DNA of 64,000 bases from Geosiphon pyriformis uo1 (lineage: Eukaryota; Fungi; Glomeromycota): the NCBI GenBank assembly GCA_016748015.1, contig JAAOMT010000563.1, positions 372,001 through 436,000 of the forward strand, in the 5' to 3' direction. Below the pieces are notes generated by a model. It was given only the letters and a program-made list of their open reading frames with translations, ran no database searches and was not told where the DNA came from. The translations under genes and the position numbers were made by a program. Of the stretch, positions 42,610 to 50,592 are shown piece after piece; positions within the stretch are counted from its first letter, which is position 1, and each line of letters starts with the position of its first letter.

Positions 42610-44453
42610 TTGATGATGATGAGTCAAATTATCAATATCGACAATAATAAAAAAAATTTAATTTCTTTTCCCTACCTTTATTATGTTTTTCTTACCTTTG
42701 ATTTCATCGCGATCTTTCCAAAGCAACTTAAAGAAAAGACATTTCATTCTCTGTTTGATTTCTTCTCCGAGTCTGTCATTCTTTTTTAATATTCTTTCAT
42801 ATTCGCCGCCGTGTAAAAAAAAAAAAAAAAAAATTTATCCAAAAGAGTTATTATTAGAATAATCATCACGGGTTCCCTGACACTTTTCTTGTTGATTCAA
42901 TTTAATCGGTGTATTAAATTTATGAAAATCTTGTAACCCATTTCAAATTTCAATAGAATTTTACTTTAAAATTTCTATATATTATAAATTTGGAATACAG
43001 TCTCAATACCCTTTTGAACTTTTTTATCCAATAGTATGAAAAAATTTTCAATTTTACTTTGAGTAAATCTGCACCCCCATCCAACATCCCCTTTCTTCAC
43101 CTCCTCTCTAACATTCTTTCTATTACTTACTTTAATCTCATTTTTAATAAAGCCAACTCTTTTTCACTCGTTTTTCCCCCCTCTTTTCTTTTCTCTCTTC
43201 TCTTCTTCACCACCACTTTAGACCGGTGAATAAAAAATAACAAACCAGCAAAAAGCAGCAAACTGTACAGTGTACGGGTAATATATCTCTTAATCAAAAT
43301 TAAAATTATTTCTTTTTGTCGTGATTTTTTTCTCTTCAATCAACAAAAATATATATCAATGAAGAAAGCTTTAAGGACTATATATTAGATTTTTTCACTT
43401 GGATAAAGATTGCGAGTTTTTTCAAACATTTTACATTTTATTCCCGAGTTGCTGCAAAACAACTAGAAAAACTAAAAAAGAACAAAGAGTTTGTTGCTCG
43501 TTTTATCCATCAACTGGGAACATTATCTTGAAATCTCCTCTTGCTATTTTTTATTCGTGACAATACTAAGCAATTCTCTCCTCAATTATTCCCCATTTTC
43601 CTGATATCAACAATTTAATAGATTATCGACAAAATATAGACGCTGCCAAAGAGCCTCCCATACAAACTTCGTAAAGAAAGCTGATCTCTTCGCCTCACTC
43701 TCACCTGAGAAAAAAAAGAAAAAAAGAAAATTCTTGTAATTTTCTTTCACTCCCTCCCCTTCATTCAAAAACTTCATTTTCCGTTTACAACTCGCTGGTC
43801 AAATAGACACATCAGAATTGCAAACCCCAAACAGCATTCAACGTTCTTCACAAATAGAATAGCATAAACTTTTCCTTCAAACTACATTACAACTACTACT
43901 GGTTGCTGGTATCTTTAAAATAATAGGTACATATAATAATAATAATAATAATAACAATAATAATTATAATAATTATAATAATAATAATTTTTTTTTTTCA
44001 TGTAAAAAATCTTTTTCTTGACCGTCCAAAATTAATCACCGATTCTTTTTCTCTCTTACTAGCGTATCTTACTCAAAATCTTTACCAGAATTTACCACGC
44101 CGACTTCTCCGGCCCCTTCACTCTCTCACTTTTCCACCACGAATTCCAACAACAATAACAGTTCTTCCTCCGTCACGAACTCGCCAAAGAACCAGAACTC
44201 TACCGCGAATTCAGCCTCCACTTCTCCAAAAACTAATAACAGCAACAACTCTCAAGCTGCGTCACGCTCTTTAAACAACAACAACAACAACAACAACTCC
44301 TCCTCTGTGAACACTTCTCCCTCGTCTACCTCTGTTAATTTACCTCCTCACCCTTCCGCCTTCTCTCCTTATCAAAATTCAGCTCAGCATCCTACACCAG
44401 TCACAACCCCAACATCTATTCCTAAAAACCCTCTTTCACAACCAGAAGTAAAC

Positions 44454-46697
44454 ATGATGACTTCACATTTGGAAAATGGTGCCAGTCCTACTTTAGGCTA
44501 TCCACCACACACCCACTTTGCAAATCCCACAGCTCATCCCTATTGGCCACAATGGTCCGGTGTTAATGGGGCTAATGGGACCAATGGAGTAGCCGTTGCC
44601 ACATTATCAAATAATCAAGGAAGTGCCTTCATGCCAGCATATGGGAGTCCAGCAGGAGCTGCTATTTCCCAACACAATCCTCGCCCAAAATTAACAACAA
44701 CAATATGGGAAGATGAAGCCACACTTTGTTACCAAGTTGATGCTCGAGGCATCTGTGTAGCAAGACGTCAAGGTACTATTTCAATTTGTCAATTCTTCCA
44801 GATTTTATACTTAAAATTGCTGACTATGAATTCTGAGAAAACTTATTGATCCTTGTCAAAATGAGATGGGGGCCTATAATTTGGTCAAATCGATTCCCAA
44901 CATCTAAATTATTATTTATCAATTATCCAATTCAACATATTTATCCAGTTATTTCCGGCATCCTTTTAATAACCCTTTTCTCTTTTTTTTTTTTTTTTTT
45001 TTTTTACCAAATAACTTTAGATAATGACATGATCAACGGTACAAAACTGTTAAATGTAGTCGGAATGTCACGAGGCAAAAGAGACGGCATTCTCAAAAAT
45101 GAAAAAGGCAGAGTTGTAGTGAAAGTTGGAGCAATGCATCTTAAAGGTGTTTGGTATGTAGAGCTTTACGGCCCCACAGATTTTATACAATATATAATTC
45201 ATCCAGAAAAATTCATCTTCTTACCAAACTATTACTATACAAAATGATTCACATTATAGGATTACATTTTCACGTGCAAAGGCCCTTGCCACCCAATTCA
45301 AAATTACTGAGCTACTTTATCCACTTTTCGTGGAGGATCCAAGTGTCTTTCTTCACAATTCTTACGGTAGCCCTGTGCACAGAATTCCTTCAATGGGCAC
45401 AGCAGCATCGTCTCAATGGAGACCTCATCATTTCACCAACACGTTCAATAATGGCACCTATGCTGAAACAGGTAGGCCATGGTATCCATACAGTAGTGGT
45501 AGTCCTGTTGCCAGTATGATTCAACCCACATCAGGTTCCCAAGGTATGGCGATTTCCTTCTTTTTTTTTTGGTGATCTTCCCAAGTCATCTACATTGTGT
45601 CTTTTGTAGTTAACATCAATTCCTTTCCTTTTCTTTAAAGGAACAAGAGGCCATAATCCTCATCCTCCGCAACATATCGAGGAAGAATATACAAACTATA
45701 ACCTGATGAATGGACAATCGCAACAGGGTCAACAAGGAGTTGTAGTCTCTGGAGGTGTAAGTACTTGAGAAATCTCGAAACTTTGTTTACGCTTTCGAAA
45801 TCATACGTGAAAAAACTTAACGAGTCGTTTATTTTCTAGAATTCATTTCAGGGAAGACCTCCAGCACAGTACGAAGGATCACCAAATTCGCAACAAATTC
45901 GTACGCCCAATCCTCTCTACAATAGTGTGAAAGCTGAGGAAGGTTCCCCAAGTAATGGAACAACAAGTTATTTCCGTTCCGCTTCTGGCCTCTATAACCT
46001 TGTTTCTGCAACCGAAGTTGTTGGTGGAACAACATCACAATCCGCTTCTCCTCAATTGATTGGTCAAAAACGTAGCTATGACGGGGATGACAATGATGAG
46101 TATAACAATGCCGTCAATCATTCCAATCAATCGAGTCCTCCACTTCCTATGCATCCCCCACCGTTGTCTAGCATAGCTGTTGGTGCGACAATGAATGTGG
46201 CCGCAAATTCTTTCCCAAGTCCATTGAACGTTAGCCCACAATCATCTCCAGGAAACACATCAGCTTTCTCCGGATGGAATCACGCTGGAAAACGAGTGAA
46301 ATACGAATATCCCGAAGCCACTACTCCATCATCAGCTCACTCATCTCCGAGGATTGGACCTGGTTATCAATTGCCTGGTTTAGGCGCAGGCCCTGCTACC
46401 CCCGGATCAGCAACTACCCCAACACAGGCATCATACACAAACAGCTCACTTCAATTGGTGACTAATGCTCAAGGTAGTCCTCATCATTATTCATCTGCCG
46501 CCAATAACGGTCCCGCCACAGGTACAACAACACCAACAACCGAAGGATTAGATCGGTACTTTCAAGATAGTGCTGTATTAAATACACCACCGGAAAGTGG
46601 TGGCGTCGGTACTCCAGTCGAGGAGAATAATAGACGCTATGATCAATACCGACGAGATGAATCAAATGATGAATTAAACAACAGTCAATGGGAATAG
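44454..46697 (+). CDS. stuA: APSES-domain transcription factor, StuA/Sok2/Efg1 clade (start may lie further upstream)
   Basis: Spliced [59 protein letters not shown]...HLKGVWITFSRA...LYPLF. Introns at 44773-45020, 45154-45259, about 45544-45640 and about 45757-45839. Confidence 0.93.
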
Positions 46698-48069
46698 ATC
46701 TGTCGGGTTGTGATTTTAGTAGTATAATCTAGATAAAAAGGTTGAATGTGAATACCCATCATGACTCTTCCGTTCTCTCTCCCGATCTTTCCTACTACGC
46801 TATTATTTTTATGGCAAAAAAAAAACAACTGAAAATCTTCAAAGAAACATTTTTCTCCCTTTTCTTTTTGTAGTTTCTCTTTACGCTTTTTTTCTTTCAA
46901 TACGGCACGTGGCTACAACTAGTTATCTACGTCTCGTTTCTCTTTTTTTTTTAATTTTTCAAATGGACTTTTTAGAGCACTTCATATAAACAAATCAATT
47001 AGACAGAACACCCTAGAGAGGGCAAAATACATACACAAGCACATACGCCACCCACATACAAAAAACTTCTACAATCAACACCCTCTCCCGACAAATAACG
47101 AAAGAGATATATATTGTGATTCAGTTATTTGAGATTGTCAATACATCCATGTGAGTTTGGCTACAAGATAAAATGCTAAATACATAAAAAACCATGTTGG
47201 TTTCTTTTTTCTTTTCTGTTTGTAAATATGCAAAATGATGAGGCAGAATGGATGGATAATCTATTTTATTATCAATAGACGTGAAGTTTAAAAATATTTT
47301 GGTCTAAAAAGTTTGCGAGATACTTATTCATAATATTATTGAACTTTGAGAACCATAATTTAAAACATGAAAAGACTCGAGCTCCAGAATAAGATTATAT
47401 ATTATCAGCGCATACTAAAGGGATATAAAATTTTTTATCATTGTTTGATTGATATCTAGTACGGCTAGTAAAGATATTGTGAAAATAAAGATCTGTGATC
47501 TGCCAAATCAGTAAATTAATTGATCAATAAAAGCAGCTTTTAAGTCTCAAAGCCTAATGTCTGATCCAAGAAAATGTTTTAATTAATATTATTTTTACAA
47601 TACAATAGATCTAATTAAACATATTGGTTTTATTTAATTAATTTTTACAAATATTTTTAATGCTTATTATTAGATATTTGTTATAATTAACAAACAAACC
47701 AATTTTATAATTTAACAACTTGGTATAAATTTTACATTTGTGTTAAAATTAATATTTTTTGTTTTTAATAAATTAATATTTAATATAAATAGTTATTTAC
47801 ATAGTTGTAATTTATATAATAATGCTTTAATTAAATTTTCAAATTATAAATACAATTAGTTGCAATCTGTTCAATATTATGTGTCATATTTAAAAATTCG
47901 ATTTTTAGTAATTAAAATCAATTTTTTATTAAAATACTTATTTTTAATATGAAAATCAAAACATCAACAAGATTCTAAAGATCGTCAGAACGAAACACTT
48001 ACAATTTTTCTTTTATTTTTATTTTTATTTTTATTTCTCAGTAAATCAAGAAAAATAATGGGATGATTT

Positions 48070-49851
48070 TTAATTGTTTTTGACCTCCCACCATGCACGT
48101 GGAGGTTTTACTCGCCTACCAGAACGGGTTGTTTTCTTTGATCTATTAAGGTGATCAACAGGAGTATAAATGGAACTTTTTCGTCTTCTTGTAGTCGGGG
48201 AAACAAGGCGAGGAGGCTCAGGTGTAATATTATTAGTGACCTCAGGATAGGAAATTTCAGGAACAGTATTGATGGGATCGGAAGAGAAGGCTTCATGGAG
48301 AATATCATCGCTGTGATCAGAAGATGAGGCTTTGGCTTCAACAATCCCAGGGGGATCCAGAGATGTTTCTAGAAGGGTAGTATTGGTGAAATCGGAATGA
48401 GCAGTATCGACAACGACAGAAATGAGGACATTAGATGAAGCGGCTTCGCGAATATCACTAGCGTAATCGGAAGGGATTTCGGGACCGACACATTTAATAG
48501 CATCAGAAAATATTTTGGGAGCTACCGCCGCAATTGAATTATTTTTCGAATCACTAACGGGAGGGATGTTTGAATTGGTTTCCGAGTCATCAGAAGGTGA
48601 AGAATCTACGTCATTCGTGACAGTTTTCGAATTTTCAATGGACAACGCAACAACCATATTCGAGTTAATCCCCGAGTCATCAATAGGGGGACCAGCTGTT
48701 AAATCTAAGTTAGCCTCCAAATCATCAATAGGCAATGACACTATTAAATCCAATTTATCAGCTTGTATGTCATCAACGGAGGCAGGAGCTACGAGATCCA
48801 ATTTATCGGTCTCTTCTAATTCACCATCATCAGATGACTCATTTAAGGCTTGCTTTTGTAACTTGGTAACCATTAGCCTGATATCACGTTTTTCCTCACG
48901 AACAAGAAGCTCACCAAGAGTGGCCTCTGACCAATCTTCCGGGAAGCCAAATTTAAAATCTTTGACATACTTTTCGGAGAATCCTAAGTTAAAGATTAAA
49001 TTTAGGAGAATATTCATGAGACCAATTATATAAAAATATTTTAATAATTTACCATCTTTACACATTTTTTCATAGTCCAAATCACCATGAAGTTGAACAA
49101 TTGTCCCAGTAAACGTTTCCAAAGTGTGTTCATCTATTCTACTTATTATAAGTGAACTATGCCATTTCTTAAATTTATAGTTATTTTCAATAAATGAATA
49201 AATTGATGATTAATATCCATTTAATTATTGGTTTTTGGATGGATTCTGAAATTAAAAATAGATTACCGATTTCATTCCAAGTTCAGAATTTTGACGAAAG
49301 CCTTCAATAAGGATCCATGTTTTGAGCTGTTCCCCTTTCTTTTTAATTATTATAAAATAAATCAATTTAAGAATTTTTACTATAAATCAAGAACATAATT
49401 TTAAATGCTTTGGTTTGACCTTTGATCATAATATACTTACAAAACCTGGAGCCAATATACATCGAAGGCACCATCGTGAAAGAACTATGGTATACTTTGT
49501 CTCATCGAATTTGGAATTACTTCGTATACGTTTAAGGTTTTCTGAAAGATCATGTTGATCACTGGTCCTTAACTTTCTTTTGTCTTTGAAAACTGAAAGA
49601 TATGTTGCTGATGATGATGATGATAATGATGGAGATGGCCCAAAAACCGACTCTAATGTATTCTTATGATTTTTAGGGGTTATGCTCCCTGACATAGTTT
49701 GATAGTCCGTCGAAATAAAGGATTTCATCTTTTCTGGCGACGTGTCAGTTTGCAACATCGACGACGATCGAGTTACAAGCAGCGAATTTTTATTCTCAAT
49801 TTTGGCAGAAAATCCTGACGTATATTTATATCCAGGTTTCAATTGGTGCAT
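48070..49851 (-). CDS. KNL2: KNL2/Mis18BP1-like CENP-A loading factor (SANTA domain plus C-terminal CENP-C motif)
   Basis: Spliced LSRWCLR...WILIEGF...WHSSLIISRIDEHTLETFTGTIVQLHGDLD...GFSEKYVKDFKFGFPEDW matches the SANTA pattern. The C-terminus is TTRSGRRVKPPRAWWE. Confidence 0.85.
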
Positions 49852-50149: not shown

Positions 50150-50592
50150 ATGGTGGTTGGCACCGCAAAAAGGTAAATTTTCATATTCTATTAAATAGAA
50201 ATTTCATATGTAATTATTTGTTCACATGATAAATCCAAATGCGTGTCGTAAACAAGGAATCGACAAAGACCTCGATTCATTCACGCGAGAAAGGTCGAAA
50301 ATGGCAAAGAACTTTTTTTGGTTCAATTCAAAAGGTAATCGACTCTTTGGAGAATATGATAACTTATTTTTCTTCAAAGTCCCACCTTCAACGATGTGCT
50401 TTTACTGTTGCGAAGCGAGTTTGTTAAGATCATTCTTTACCAGAGCCCATCCCTAGTCGGTGGATTGCGGCCGGTAGTAATCGTTGCCTCGATTCTTTAA
50501 TTGAAAAGTACAATAAAGAGGTCTGGCGTCAATTCAGAAGTGTTAATAATGGATTAAATCAAGATCAGGAAGTTCCAACTTTCAGTTCATAA
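50150..50592 (+). CDS. Putative 78-aa chromo/chromo-shadow-like protein (exons 50150-50172, 50257-50334, 50457-50592)
   Basis: Two GT-AG introns in matching phase give MVVGTAKRNRQRPRFIHARKVENGKELFLVQFKSRWIAAGSNRCLDSLIEKYNKEVWRQFRSVNNGLNQDQEVPTFSS. Confidence 0.55.

What the first reader, a model, noticed from the sequence alone, without database searches (positions are those of the whole stretch)
48070..49851. Fungal KNL2/Mis18BP1 with SANTA domain and a CENP-C-type motif
Seen: splicing four exons gives a SANTA-like domain (WxL..IEG..WHSS.I..R....L.T..G..VQL.G..D..GF....F..GFPEDW) and a terminal RSGRRVKPPRAWW (R-x7-WW). Known: SANTA plus a CENPC-k motif defines plant and non-mammalian vertebrate KNL2/M18BP1, which licenses CENP-A loading. 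Model yeasts lack KNL2, and Mucorales have lost CENP-A and CENP-C. Inference: this lineage keeps an ancestral animal/plant-like centromere licensing route that is little studied in fungi.
Basis: partly seen in the sequence, partly recalled or inferred. Interest (0 to 1): 0.8.

Follow-up and report, generated by a model that had tools for sequence, protein, structure and literature searches.

The report
Geosiphon KNL2/M18BP1 centromere licensing gene
This is an intact four-exon gene of the fungus Geosiphon pyriformis for the centromere-licensing protein KNL2/M18BP1, a real but expected member of a family already reported in early-diverging fungi.

Summary
On the minus strand at 48070-49851 lies a four-exon gene with GT..AG introns of 102, 99 and 69 nt.

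- **SANTA domain:** it matches Pfam SANTA end to end (72.9 bits, E 3e-20). An AlphaFold model (pLDDT 90) superposes on the human M18BP1 SANTA crystal structure 9r6h (TM 0.74, 1.9 Å). The Trp-His pair essential in the human protein is kept.
- **C-terminal motif:** RSGRRVKPPRAWW has the CENPC-k signature of plant and vertebrate KNL2 (RSGR-x4-P-x2-aromatic-W). It carries the arginine and aromatic pair that contact the CENP-A nucleosome in the chicken cryo-EM structure.
- **Partner genes:** the genome also holds two CENP-A-like H3 genes and genes for CENP-C, Mis18 and Scm3.
- **Relatives:** proteins with the same layout occur in eight other Glomeromycotina genera, Basidiobolus, Kickxellomycotina and a chytrid.

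The function is inferred and was not tested. Novelty is modest. Zuo et al. 2022 already list chytrid fungi among CENPC-k KNL2 carriers, and the protein is in public databases flagged with a SANTA domain. One small new point is that the motif sits 2-5 residues from the C-terminus in several fungi, so the hairpin that reads the CENP-A RG-loop in chicken is absent.

The parts
49441..49851 (-). Exon 1. The first in-frame ATG is at 49851; the deposited model starts at the second ATG, 49758. It encodes the Ser/Thr-rich N-terminal region and the first strand of the SANTA domain (..IVLSRWCLRCILAPGF).
   Evidence: The translation of 49758-49441 equals P0001 residues 1-106. A stop lies 3 codons upstream of 49851.
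49339..49440 (-). Intron 1, 102 nt, GTAAGT..AG, phase 0.
   Evidence: GC is 18%. The junction is the same as in deposited P0001.
49267..49338 (-). Exon 2, 24 codons (KGEQLKTWILIEGFRQNSELGMKS), part of the SANTA domain.
   Evidence: equals P0001 residues 107-130. The invariant W114 and G119 of the fungal alignment lie here.
49168..49266 (-). Intron 2, 99 nt, GTAATC..AG, phase 0.
   Evidence: GC is 18%.
49053..49167 (-). Exon 3, the SANTA core (KWHSSLIISRIDEH...CKD plus the first base of a Gly codon). W132-H133 (49164-49159) align with human M18BP1 W413-H414.
   Evidence: SANTA 27.7 bits for this exon alone; alignment to 9r6h.
48984..49052 (-). Intron 3, 69 nt, GTAAAT..AG, phase 1. It is in frame and free of stops, so it also reads through as an ORF.
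   Evidence: GC is 17%. The SANTA profile match splits around it when it is read through.
48070..48983 (-). Exon 4: the end of the SANTA domain (FSEKYVKDFKFGFPEDW), a long acidic Ser/Asp-rich linker, the C-terminal motif and the TAA stop (48072-48070).
   Evidence: equals P0001 residues 170-472.
48925..49488 (-). SANTA domain (P0001 residues 91-188), spread over all four exons.
   Evidence: Pfam PF09133, 72.9 bits, E 3.1e-20, profile 1-91/92. AF2 pLDDT 90.3. Foldseek top hit 9r6h, M18BP1 SANTA, TM 0.74, rmsd 1.9 Å.
48088..48126 (-). CENPC-k type motif RSGRRVKPPRAWW (P0001 R455-W467). R458 corresponds to chicken KNL2 R527, and W466/W467 to F535/W536. EVKNN and the stop follow.
   Evidence: Motif rules come from PMC9210943 and PMC10015371. 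The same T[RS]SGR-x4-P-x2-[FYW]W is in 69 of 150 SANTA representatives.

Best explanation
The gene encodes the Geosiphon pyriformis orthologue of KNL2/M18BP1, the protein that licenses centromeres for deposition of new CENP-A.

Shown here:
- The gene is intact and single-copy, with four exons.
- It has a full SANTA domain of the M18BP1 fold that keeps the Trp-His surface pair.
- A long acidic, probably disordered linker follows the domain.
- A CENPC-k motif lies at the extreme C-terminus.
- No SANT/Myb domain is present, so the layout is that of plant alpha-KNL2.
- The same genome encodes two CENP-A-like histones, CENP-C, Mis18 and Scm3/HJURP.
- The same layout is conserved in other early-diverging fungi.

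Inferred from work on chicken, Xenopus and Arabidopsis:
- The C-terminal peptide docks on CENP-A nucleosomes. R458 would sit in the H2A/H2B acidic patch, and W466/W467 against the hydrophobic CENP-A C-terminal tail (here ..RRIRG[LP]WGGLG).
- The SANTA domain adds a second centromere contact through its W132/H133 surface.
- The bound protein brings Mis18 and then the Scm3-CENP-A/H4 complex to existing centromeres.
For: Gene model: canonical splice sites, and exons identical to deposited G9A89_017976.

SANTA domain:
- Pfam 72.9 bits, E 3e-20, full profile length.
- It is the only SANTA locus in the 128-Mb assembly.
- phmmer against PDB sequences hits the M18BP1 SANTA chain 9r6h at E 2.4e-8, with WHS aligned to human W413/H414. 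Those residues are essential for centromere localisation (PMC12953894).
- The AF2 model has pLDDT 90.3. Its Foldseek top hits are 9r6h chains A and B (E 1e-7, TM 0.74); the next hit is at E 0.1.

Motif:
- RSGR-x4-P-x2-WW matches the plant consensus KRSRSGR[VL]LVSPLEFW. It includes the Arg and Trp whose mutation abolishes targeting (PMC9210943).
- It also matches chicken R527, F535 and W536 (PMC10015371).
- It did not arise in 200,000 shuffles of the protein.

Family:
- The exhaustive search gave 155 SANTA proteins, and 69 of the 150 listed carry the motif.
- Named hits include Pristionchus knl-2 and Protopterus mis18-binding protein 1.
- Fungal relatives with the same layout are Ambispora, Acaulospora, Gigaspora, Funneliformis, Entrophospora, Basidiobolus (two species), Mycoemilia, Zancudomyces and Gorgonomyces.
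- Diversispora, Paraglomus and Smittium also have SANTA proteins, but I saw no motif in those models.

Pathway partners in the same genome:
- CENP-C with a cupin domain, Mif2_N and its own motif RRGTRNRIKPLKFW.
- Mis18, matching S. pombe Mis18 5hj0 and human Mis18-alpha 7sfz.
- Scm3 at 58-62 bits.
- Two CENP-A-like H3 genes with a lengthened loop 1 and RW[QE]S.
Against: - No expression, localisation or binding data exist for this protein or any fungal KNL2 that I could find.
- The protein ends 5 residues after WW. [quoted passage not shown] CENP-A specificity of the fungal motif is thus not assured.
- Identity to animal and plant SANTA domains is only about 25-39%.
- The domain tree is unresolved, so orthology rests on domain content, single-copy status and best hits, not on a supported clade.
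- The region that binds Mis18 in human M18BP1 cannot be recognised here.
- The start codon (49851 or 49758) and the 3' end are not verified by transcripts.
Confidence: 0.8

Rival explanations
1. It is a KNL2 orthologue, but the minimal C-terminal motif is only a general nucleosome acidic-patch anchor that cannot tell CENP-A from H3. Centromere specificity would then come from the SANTA domain or from CENP-C/CCAN contacts, as in mammals.
For: No residues follow the motif that could form the RG-loop-reading hairpin needed in chicken (the C-terminal distance is 2-5 residues in Geosiphon, Gigaspora, Mycoemilia and Gorgonomyces). In humans the SANTA W413/H414 pair is the only indispensable localisation determinant, and that pair is conserved here.
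Against: [quoted passage not shown] Both Geosiphon CENP-A paralogues keep a hydrophobic tail, LWGGLG or PWGGLGL. The motif is conserved across about 70 representatives, which argues for a specific ligand.
Confidence: 0.13
2. It is a SANTA-domain chromatin protein with a role outside centromeres, or a decaying relic no longer used.
For: There is no functional evidence in any fungus. The long linker is poorly conserved.
Against: The reading frame is intact across four exons with good splice sites. Nine columns are invariant in the fungal SANTA alignment, and the motif is retained across Glomeromycotina, Zoopagomycota and a chytrid. All partner genes are present. SANTA may be unique to M18BP1, since no close structural homologue was found in other proteins (PMC12953894).
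Confidence: 0.05
3. The four-exon model is an annotation artefact, with chance ORFs stitched together.
For: No RNA data were available to me. The deposited model is itself a prediction.
Against: The SANTA profile runs unbroken through all three junctions. Introns have 17-18% GC against 40% in the exons. Independent gene models in more than ten fungi give the same domain order.
Confidence: 0.02

Closest known systems
Plant alpha/gamma-KNL2 (Arabidopsis alpha-KNL2)
   Same: Both have a SANTA domain in the N-terminal half, a disordered linker and a CENPC-k motif near the C-terminus with the same RSGR-x4-P-x2-aromatic-W signature. Neither has a SANT/Myb domain, and the sizes are similar (about 470-600 aa). 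The nearest ESM Atlas clusters are Streptophyta SANTA proteins.
   Different: Plant motifs are followed by a conserved WENKY.. stretch and about 25-30 more residues, whereas Geosiphon stops 5 residues after WW. Geosiphon has W-W instead of F/Y-W. SANTA identity is only about 30-35%.
Chicken/Xenopus M18BP1 (ggKNL2), CENP-A nucleosome complex solved by cryo-EM (PMC10015371)
   Same: Both have a SANTA domain followed by a CENP-C-like motif. The equivalents of R527 (acidic patch) and F535/W536 (CENP-A tail) are present as R458 and W466/W467.
   Different: The vertebrate proteins are about 1000-1400 aa, carry a SANT/Myb domain, and have the motif mid-protein with a downstream hairpin (D544) that reads the RG-loop. 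Geosiphon has none of these.
Human M18BP1 (SANTA crystal structure 9r6h, PMC12953894)
   Same: Same SANTA fold (TM 0.74, rmsd 1.9 Å) and a conserved Trp-His surface pair.
   Different: [quoted passage not shown] It also has a SANT domain.
KNL2 of other early-diverging fungi. Chytrid fungi are named in PMC9210943; found here: Gorgonomyces KAI8912711.1, Basidiobolus ORX87177.1, Gigaspora RIB22961.1, Ambispora CAG8445274.1
   Same: Same architecture, with a C-terminal T[RS]SGR..P..[WY]W motif, often within 2-5 residues of the end.
   Different: They share only 21-27% overall identity with the Geosiphon protein. Linker lengths differ widely. Other Glomeromycotina and Basidiobolus share an N-terminal IF...RSPxPxH motif that is weak in Geosiphon.
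CENP-C/Mif2 (own-genome copy on contig C357)
   Same: Shares the nucleosome-binding motif type (R..R....P..FW).
   Different: CENP-C has the R-x-R form (RRGTRNRIKPLKFWRNEKVVY), a C-terminal cupin and Mif2_N modules, and no SANTA domain. The window gene has none of the CENP-C domains, so it is not a CENP-C.
Fission-yeast Mis18 complex (Mis16, Mis18, Eic1/Mis19, Eic2/Mis20)
   Same: Same pathway goal: bringing Scm3 and CENP-A to centromeres through Mis18.
   Different: S. pombe has no M18BP1 and recruits Mis18 by other routes, including the spindle pole body (PMC7618776). Geosiphon keeps the M18BP1-type adaptor.

Membership tests
KNL2/M18BP1 | SANTA domain (Pfam PF09133) above the curated cut-off | tested here: met
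   72.9 bits against a cut-off of 21, E 3.1e-20, profile 1-91/92. Exon by exon: 27.7 and 13.8 bits. Six-frame genome hit: 49.3 bits combined.
KNL2/M18BP1 | SANTA fold as in the solved M18BP1 domain | tested here: met
   AF2 model with pLDDT 90.3 and pTM 0.80. Foldseek top hits are 9r6h chains A and B at E 1.2e-7, TM 0.74 and rmsd 1.9 Å over 100 columns; the next hit is at E 0.1.
KNL2/M18BP1 | Exposed Trp-His pair of SANTA (human W413/H414), needed for centromere recruitment | tested here: met
   The phmmer alignment to 9r6h puts P0001 W132-H133 on the human WH. W132 is present in at least 90% of the fungal rows. The requirement comes from PMC12953894.
KNL2/M18BP1 (CENPC-k-bearing subgroup: plants, non-mammalian vertebrates, chytrids) | CENPC-k motif: Arg 9 residues before a [FYW]-W pair, Pro 4 residues before the final Trp, usually as RSGR | tested here: met
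   RSGRRVKPPRAWW at residues 455-467. It agrees with the plant consensus and with the key chicken residues. It arose in 0 of 200,000 shuffles.
KNL2/M18BP1 (vertebrate type) | Hairpin downstream of the motif that reads the CENP-A RG-loop (chicken D544) | tested here: not met
   Only EVKNN follows the motif before the stop. Gigaspora, Mycoemilia and Gorgonomyces are the same. This feature defines the chicken binding mode, not family membership.
KNL2/M18BP1 (animal type) | SANT/Myb domain | tested here: not met
   No Myb/SANT family appears in the Pfam scan of P0001 even at E up to 10. Per PMC9210943, the conserved features of plant KNL2 are SANTA and, in the alpha and gamma clades, CENPC-k. So a SANT domain is not required for the family as a whole.
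KNL2/M18BP1 | Named family members among the significant sequence matches | tested here: met
   Pristionchus 'knl-2' at E 1.8e-14 and Protopterus 'mis18-binding protein 1' at E 4.4e-9 are among the hits. No reverse search from these proteins was run. The domain tree is unresolved, so no supported clade can be claimed.
KNL2/M18BP1 | Direct binding to CENP-A nucleosomes, Mis18 binding, centromere localisation and a requirement for CENP-A loading | not testable with these tools
   Only co-occurrence could be shown: CENP-A in two copies, CENP-C, Mis18 and Scm3 are all in the genome.
CENP-C/Mif2 (considered because of the motif) | C-terminal cupin dimerisation domain (PF11699) | tested here: not met
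   No cupin hit in P0001. The genome's CENP-C is a different gene on contig C357.

The most novel reading that the evidence does not exclude
Early-diverging fungi (Glomeromycotina, Zoopagomycota, chytrids) may share a minimal KNL2 whose CENPC-k motif is the literal C-terminus. This KNL2 would read the CENP-A nucleosome through only the acidic patch and the CENP-A tail, without the RG-loop hairpin. It would work with Mis18 and Scm3, and its loss in Dikarya and Mucorales would mark the points at which fungi rewired or abandoned CENP-A licensing. This would give a simple fungal system for asking how M18BP1 was replaced in yeasts.
Probability: 0.25. Interest if true: 0.5.

Novelty: new member of a known kind. 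Interest (0 to 1): 0.35.

Why it matters
It shows that a glomeromycotan fungus keeps the whole animal/plant-type CENP-A licensing set: KNL2, Mis18, Scm3, CENP-C and CENP-A. [quoted passage not shown] That helps place where in fungal evolution the adaptor was lost. [quoted passage not shown] The value is that of a tidy annotation and a comparative data point. It is not a new mechanism: the family, the motif and its presence in chytrid fungi are already published.

Tried and rejected
- **Word-index searches:** the read-through ORF, the SANTA region alone and the fungal alignment A1 returned essentially only the protein itself. Relatives share too few exact 5-mers, and the low-complexity linker swamped the candidates. 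I therefore used the exhaustive search.
- **The look-up of encoding contigs for P0001:** no record.
- **First CENP-C motif regex:** R.[ST].R....P..[FYW]W missed the genome's CENP-C because it has RRGTR. I found it by reading the frames.
- **SANTA-domain tree (FastTree, 145 rows, 104 columns):** deep forks are unresolved. Geosiphon sits in a weakly supported group with other Glomeromycotina, Basidiobolus and Mycoemilia. I did not use the tree as evidence of orthology.
- **N-terminal alignment:** an IF...RSPxPxH motif is clear in other Glomeromycotina and Basidiobolus but only weakly matched in Geosiphon. No claim is made from it.
- **Literature:** Kral 2016 as held does not mention fungi. The Sandmann 2017 paper could not be read. 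The 'chytrid fungi' statement therefore rests on Zuo et al. 2022 alone. No held paper links KNL2/M18BP1 with Glomeromycota.
- **Joined model of the window gene:** likewise not built or searched. Exons were searched by reference, and the deposited protein stood in for the spliced product.
- **Flanking ORFs:** no informative neighbours.
- **Taxonomic absence of KNL2 in Dikarya or Mucorales:** not tested. Only 30 of the 150 representatives were name-checked.
Full report
**What is there**

The window has 29% GC. Its one close protein match names the organism as Geosiphon pyriformis, a glomeromycotan fungus. The assembly is 128 Mb in 792 contigs, and the window is contig C705:372001-436000.

On the minus strand between 49851 and 48070 the frames read as four exons: 49851-49441, 49338-49267, 49167-49053 and 48983-48070 including the stop. 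They are separated by introns of 102, 99 and 69 nt. Each intron begins GTAA and ends AG. The introns have 17-18% GC, against 40% for the exon stretches. Intron 3 is in frame and free of stops, which is why a mechanical ORF of 350 aa runs through it.

**How the spliced product was checked**

The exons were searched one by one by reference. Exon 3 alone reaches Pfam SANTA at 27.7 bits (cut-off 21). The start of exon 4 gives 13.8 bits. The stretch from exon 3 through exon 4, read by reference across intron 3, gives 45 bits in two pieces.

The word-index search with that read-through stretch returned one protein, P0001. This is 'hypothetical protein G9A89_017976 [Geosiphon pyriformis]', 472 aa, already flagged with PF09133. 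Each exon's translation is an exact piece of P0001, at residues 1-106, 107-130, 131-168 and 170-472, with the split Gly codon at 169. It differs only in starting at the second ATG (49758) rather than the first (49851).

P0001 matches the SANTA profile over positions 1-91 of 92 in one unbroken stretch, at 72.9 bits and E 3.1e-20. That unbroken match across three junctions is itself good evidence for the splice sites. The six-frame genome search finds no second SANTA locus.

**The SANTA domain at structure level**

A sequence search of PDB chains hits the M18BP1 SANTA construct 9r6h at E 2.4e-8. P0001 KWHSSLIISRI aligns with human YWHSNVIIERI. The paper that reports 9r6h shows that human W413/H414 form an exposed surface pair and that the WH/AA mutant cannot localise or load CENP-A (PMC12953894). 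These residues are W132/H133 here.

I aligned 83 SANTA domains from the exhaustive search (A2) and folded the Geosiphon domain. The model has mean pLDDT 90.3 and pTM 0.80, with six strands followed by three helices. Foldseek against the PDB returns 9r6h chains A and B as the only significant matches (E 1e-7, TM 0.74, rmsd 1.9 Å over 100 columns). The next hit is at E 0.1.

**The C-terminal motif**

The protein ends ..KKTTRSGRRVKPPRAWWEVKNN.

- Zuo et al. 2022 give the plant CENPC-k consensus as KRSRSGR[V/L]LVSPLEFW. They note that the Arg of SGR and the Trp are needed for centromere targeting in Arabidopsis (PMC9210943).
[quoted passage not shown] That places the Arg nine residues before the Trp (PMC10015371).
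- In Geosiphon, R458 is nine residues before W467, P463 is four before it, and W466/W467 form the aromatic pair. RSG precedes R458, exactly as in plants.

The motif is the only match to even the loosest form of the pattern in all six frames of the 64-kb window. The strict forms never arose in 200,000 shuffles of the protein.

It is the KNL2 flavour of the motif and not the CENP-C flavour. The genome's own CENP-C reads VRRGTRNRIKPLKFWRNEKVVYGR, with the R-x-R spacing typical of CENP-C.

**Relatives**

The word-index searches could not see relatives, so I used the exhaustive profile-free search once. It gave 155 proteins at E ≤ 1e-3, all matching through the SANTA region. Of the 150 listed, 69 carry R-x4-P-x2-[FYW]W, almost always as T[RS]SGR.

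I looked up names for 30 of them:

- **Glomeromycotina (the nearest hits):** Ambispora leptoticha, Diversispora eburnea, Entrophospora, Acaulospora morrowiae, Gigaspora rosea (two copies), Funneliformis mosseae and F. caledonium, and Paraglomus brasilianum.
- **Other fungi:** Basidiobolus meristosporus and B. ranarum; the Kickxellomycotina Mycoemilia scoparia, Zancudomyces culisetae and Smittium megazygosporum; and the chytrid Gorgonomyces haynaldii.
- **Non-fungal family members:** Pristionchus 'knl-2', Haemonchus SANTA/Myb proteins, lungfish 'mis18-binding protein 1' and plant SANTA proteins.

In the full-length fungal alignment, nine SANTA columns are invariant (W114, G119, R140, G158, F178, G181, F182, P183, W186). 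The T[RS]SGR..P..W motif recurs at or near the C-terminus.

The motif is 5 residues from the end in Geosiphon, 4 in Gigaspora, 2 in Mycoemilia and 5 in Gorgonomyces. This supports the stop codon at 48070-48072 as real. It also shows that these fungi lack the downstream hairpin that carries the RG-loop-reading Asp544 in chicken. Basidiobolus, Ambispora and Acaulospora have 26-49 further residues, which are basic and not hairpin-like.

No Dikarya or Mucorales turned up among the names checked, but the check was not exhaustive. The SANTA-only tree is too short to resolve deep branches and is not used as evidence.

**The rest of the pathway in this genome**

- **CENP-A.** Among the histone-fold hits, two loci encode H3 variants with CENP-A hallmarks: an altered alpha-1/loop 1 with insertions, RWQS or RWES in place of RFQS, LVHLFEDA, and tails RRIRGLWGGLG and RRIRGPWGGLGL. 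They lie at C789:420281-420852 (+) and C596:225350-225853 (−). Canonical H3 lies elsewhere.
- **CENP-C.** It lies on C357, with cupin pieces of 29.5 and 34.4 bits, two Mif2_N modules of 36.7 and 28.2 bits, and the motif exon.
- **Mis18.** A Yippee/Mis18 gene on C577 (27.4 and 30.5 bits) matches solved S. pombe Mis18 (5hj0, E 2e-5) and human Mis18-alpha (7sfz, E 4e-5), and no other solved protein at E ≤ 10.
- **Scm3/HJURP.** It is on C650 at 58-62 bits.

The full licensing set is therefore encoded.

**Most likely mechanism**

Shown here: domain content, fold, key residues, conservation and co-occurrence of the partner genes.

Inferred from vertebrate and plant work:

- The C-terminal peptide anchors the protein on existing CENP-A nucleosomes, with R458 on the acidic patch and W466/W467 on the hydrophobic CENP-A tail.
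- The SANTA W132/H133 surface provides a second centromere contact, whose ligand is unknown even in humans.
- The bound KNL2 recruits Mis18 and then Scm3 with new CENP-A/H4.

The main uncertainty is whether a motif without the RG-loop hairpin is CENP-A-specific. The rival reading is that it is a general acidic-patch anchor and that specificity comes from SANTA or from CENP-C.

**Comparison and novelty**

The architecture is that of plant alpha/gamma-KNL2: SANTA, linker, C-terminal CENPC-k and no Myb. Pfam finds no SANT/Myb domain in P0001. It is not the long SANT-bearing animal protein.

It is a member of the KNL2/M18BP1 family on every sequence and fold criterion I could test. The biochemical criteria cannot be tested here.

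It is not new in kind. Zuo et al. [quoted passage not shown] Several fungal orthologues are already labelled SANTA-domain proteins in UniProt and NCBI.

I found no held paper that discusses KNL2 in Glomeromycota, and the Mucor kinetochore survey never mentions KNL2 or Mis18. The extension to Glomeromycotina, Basidiobolus and Kickxellomycotina, and the terminal, hairpin-less form of the motif, are therefore modest additions.

**Verdict:** Interest is about 0.35.

Noticed in passing
G000:C789:420281-420852 (+) (L033) and G000:C596:225350-225853 (-) (L034): There are two distinct CENP-A-like H3 genes, each with its histone fold in three exons. Loop 1 differs strongly between them (EFVTESLELRWQS against DIITNERGGNGSVGYRWES), and the tails are RRIRGLWGGLG and RRIRGPWGGLGL. 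I did not resolve whether they are functional paralogues or diverged haplotypes.
   Followed up: partly
G000:C357:258605-259654 (-) (L031:3106-4155): The CENP-C gene carries two tandem copies of the Mif2_N module (SRKTG[IL]TVK..DGL.DIDDFF; 36.7 and 28.2 bits). Each is preceded by a similar K[RK].NKF..EIGVRGR stretch, which suggests a tandem duplication of about 300 bp.
   Followed up: partly
window 44846-45244 (+): An ORF gives a weak KilA-N domain match (20.5 bits, below the 23.8 cut-off), about 3 kb downstream of the KNL2 gene. Neighbouring ORFs at 44307-46694 have no Pfam match.
   Followed up: no
window 50226-50453 (+): The 76-aa ORF head-to-head with KNL2 overlaps the stretch another reader called a chromo-like microprotein (s1-682694). 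It gave no Pfam family at E ≤ 0.01. A spliced product was not examined.
   Followed up: partly
window 48005-48040: A short run of (TTTTA)n, which is (TAAAA)n on the gene strand, lies immediately 3' of the KNL2 stop codon. It probably belongs to an AT-rich 3' UTR or terminator region.
   Followed up: no
Proteins P0018, P0053, P0089, P0005, P0008 (alignments A1 and A3): KNL2 of other Glomeromycotina and of Basidiobolus share an N-terminal motif M..(A)IF.....A.RSP.P.H, followed by SAF..P..G. It may be a proline-directed phosphosite or a partner-binding motif. It is only weakly recognisable in Geosiphon (..TDTSPEK..).
   Followed up: partly
Proteins P0089 and P0155 (Funneliformis): In both Funneliformis gene models the CENPC-k motif lies 117 residues from the C-terminus instead of at the end. 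This may be a 3' over-extension of the gene models or a real extension.
   Followed up: no
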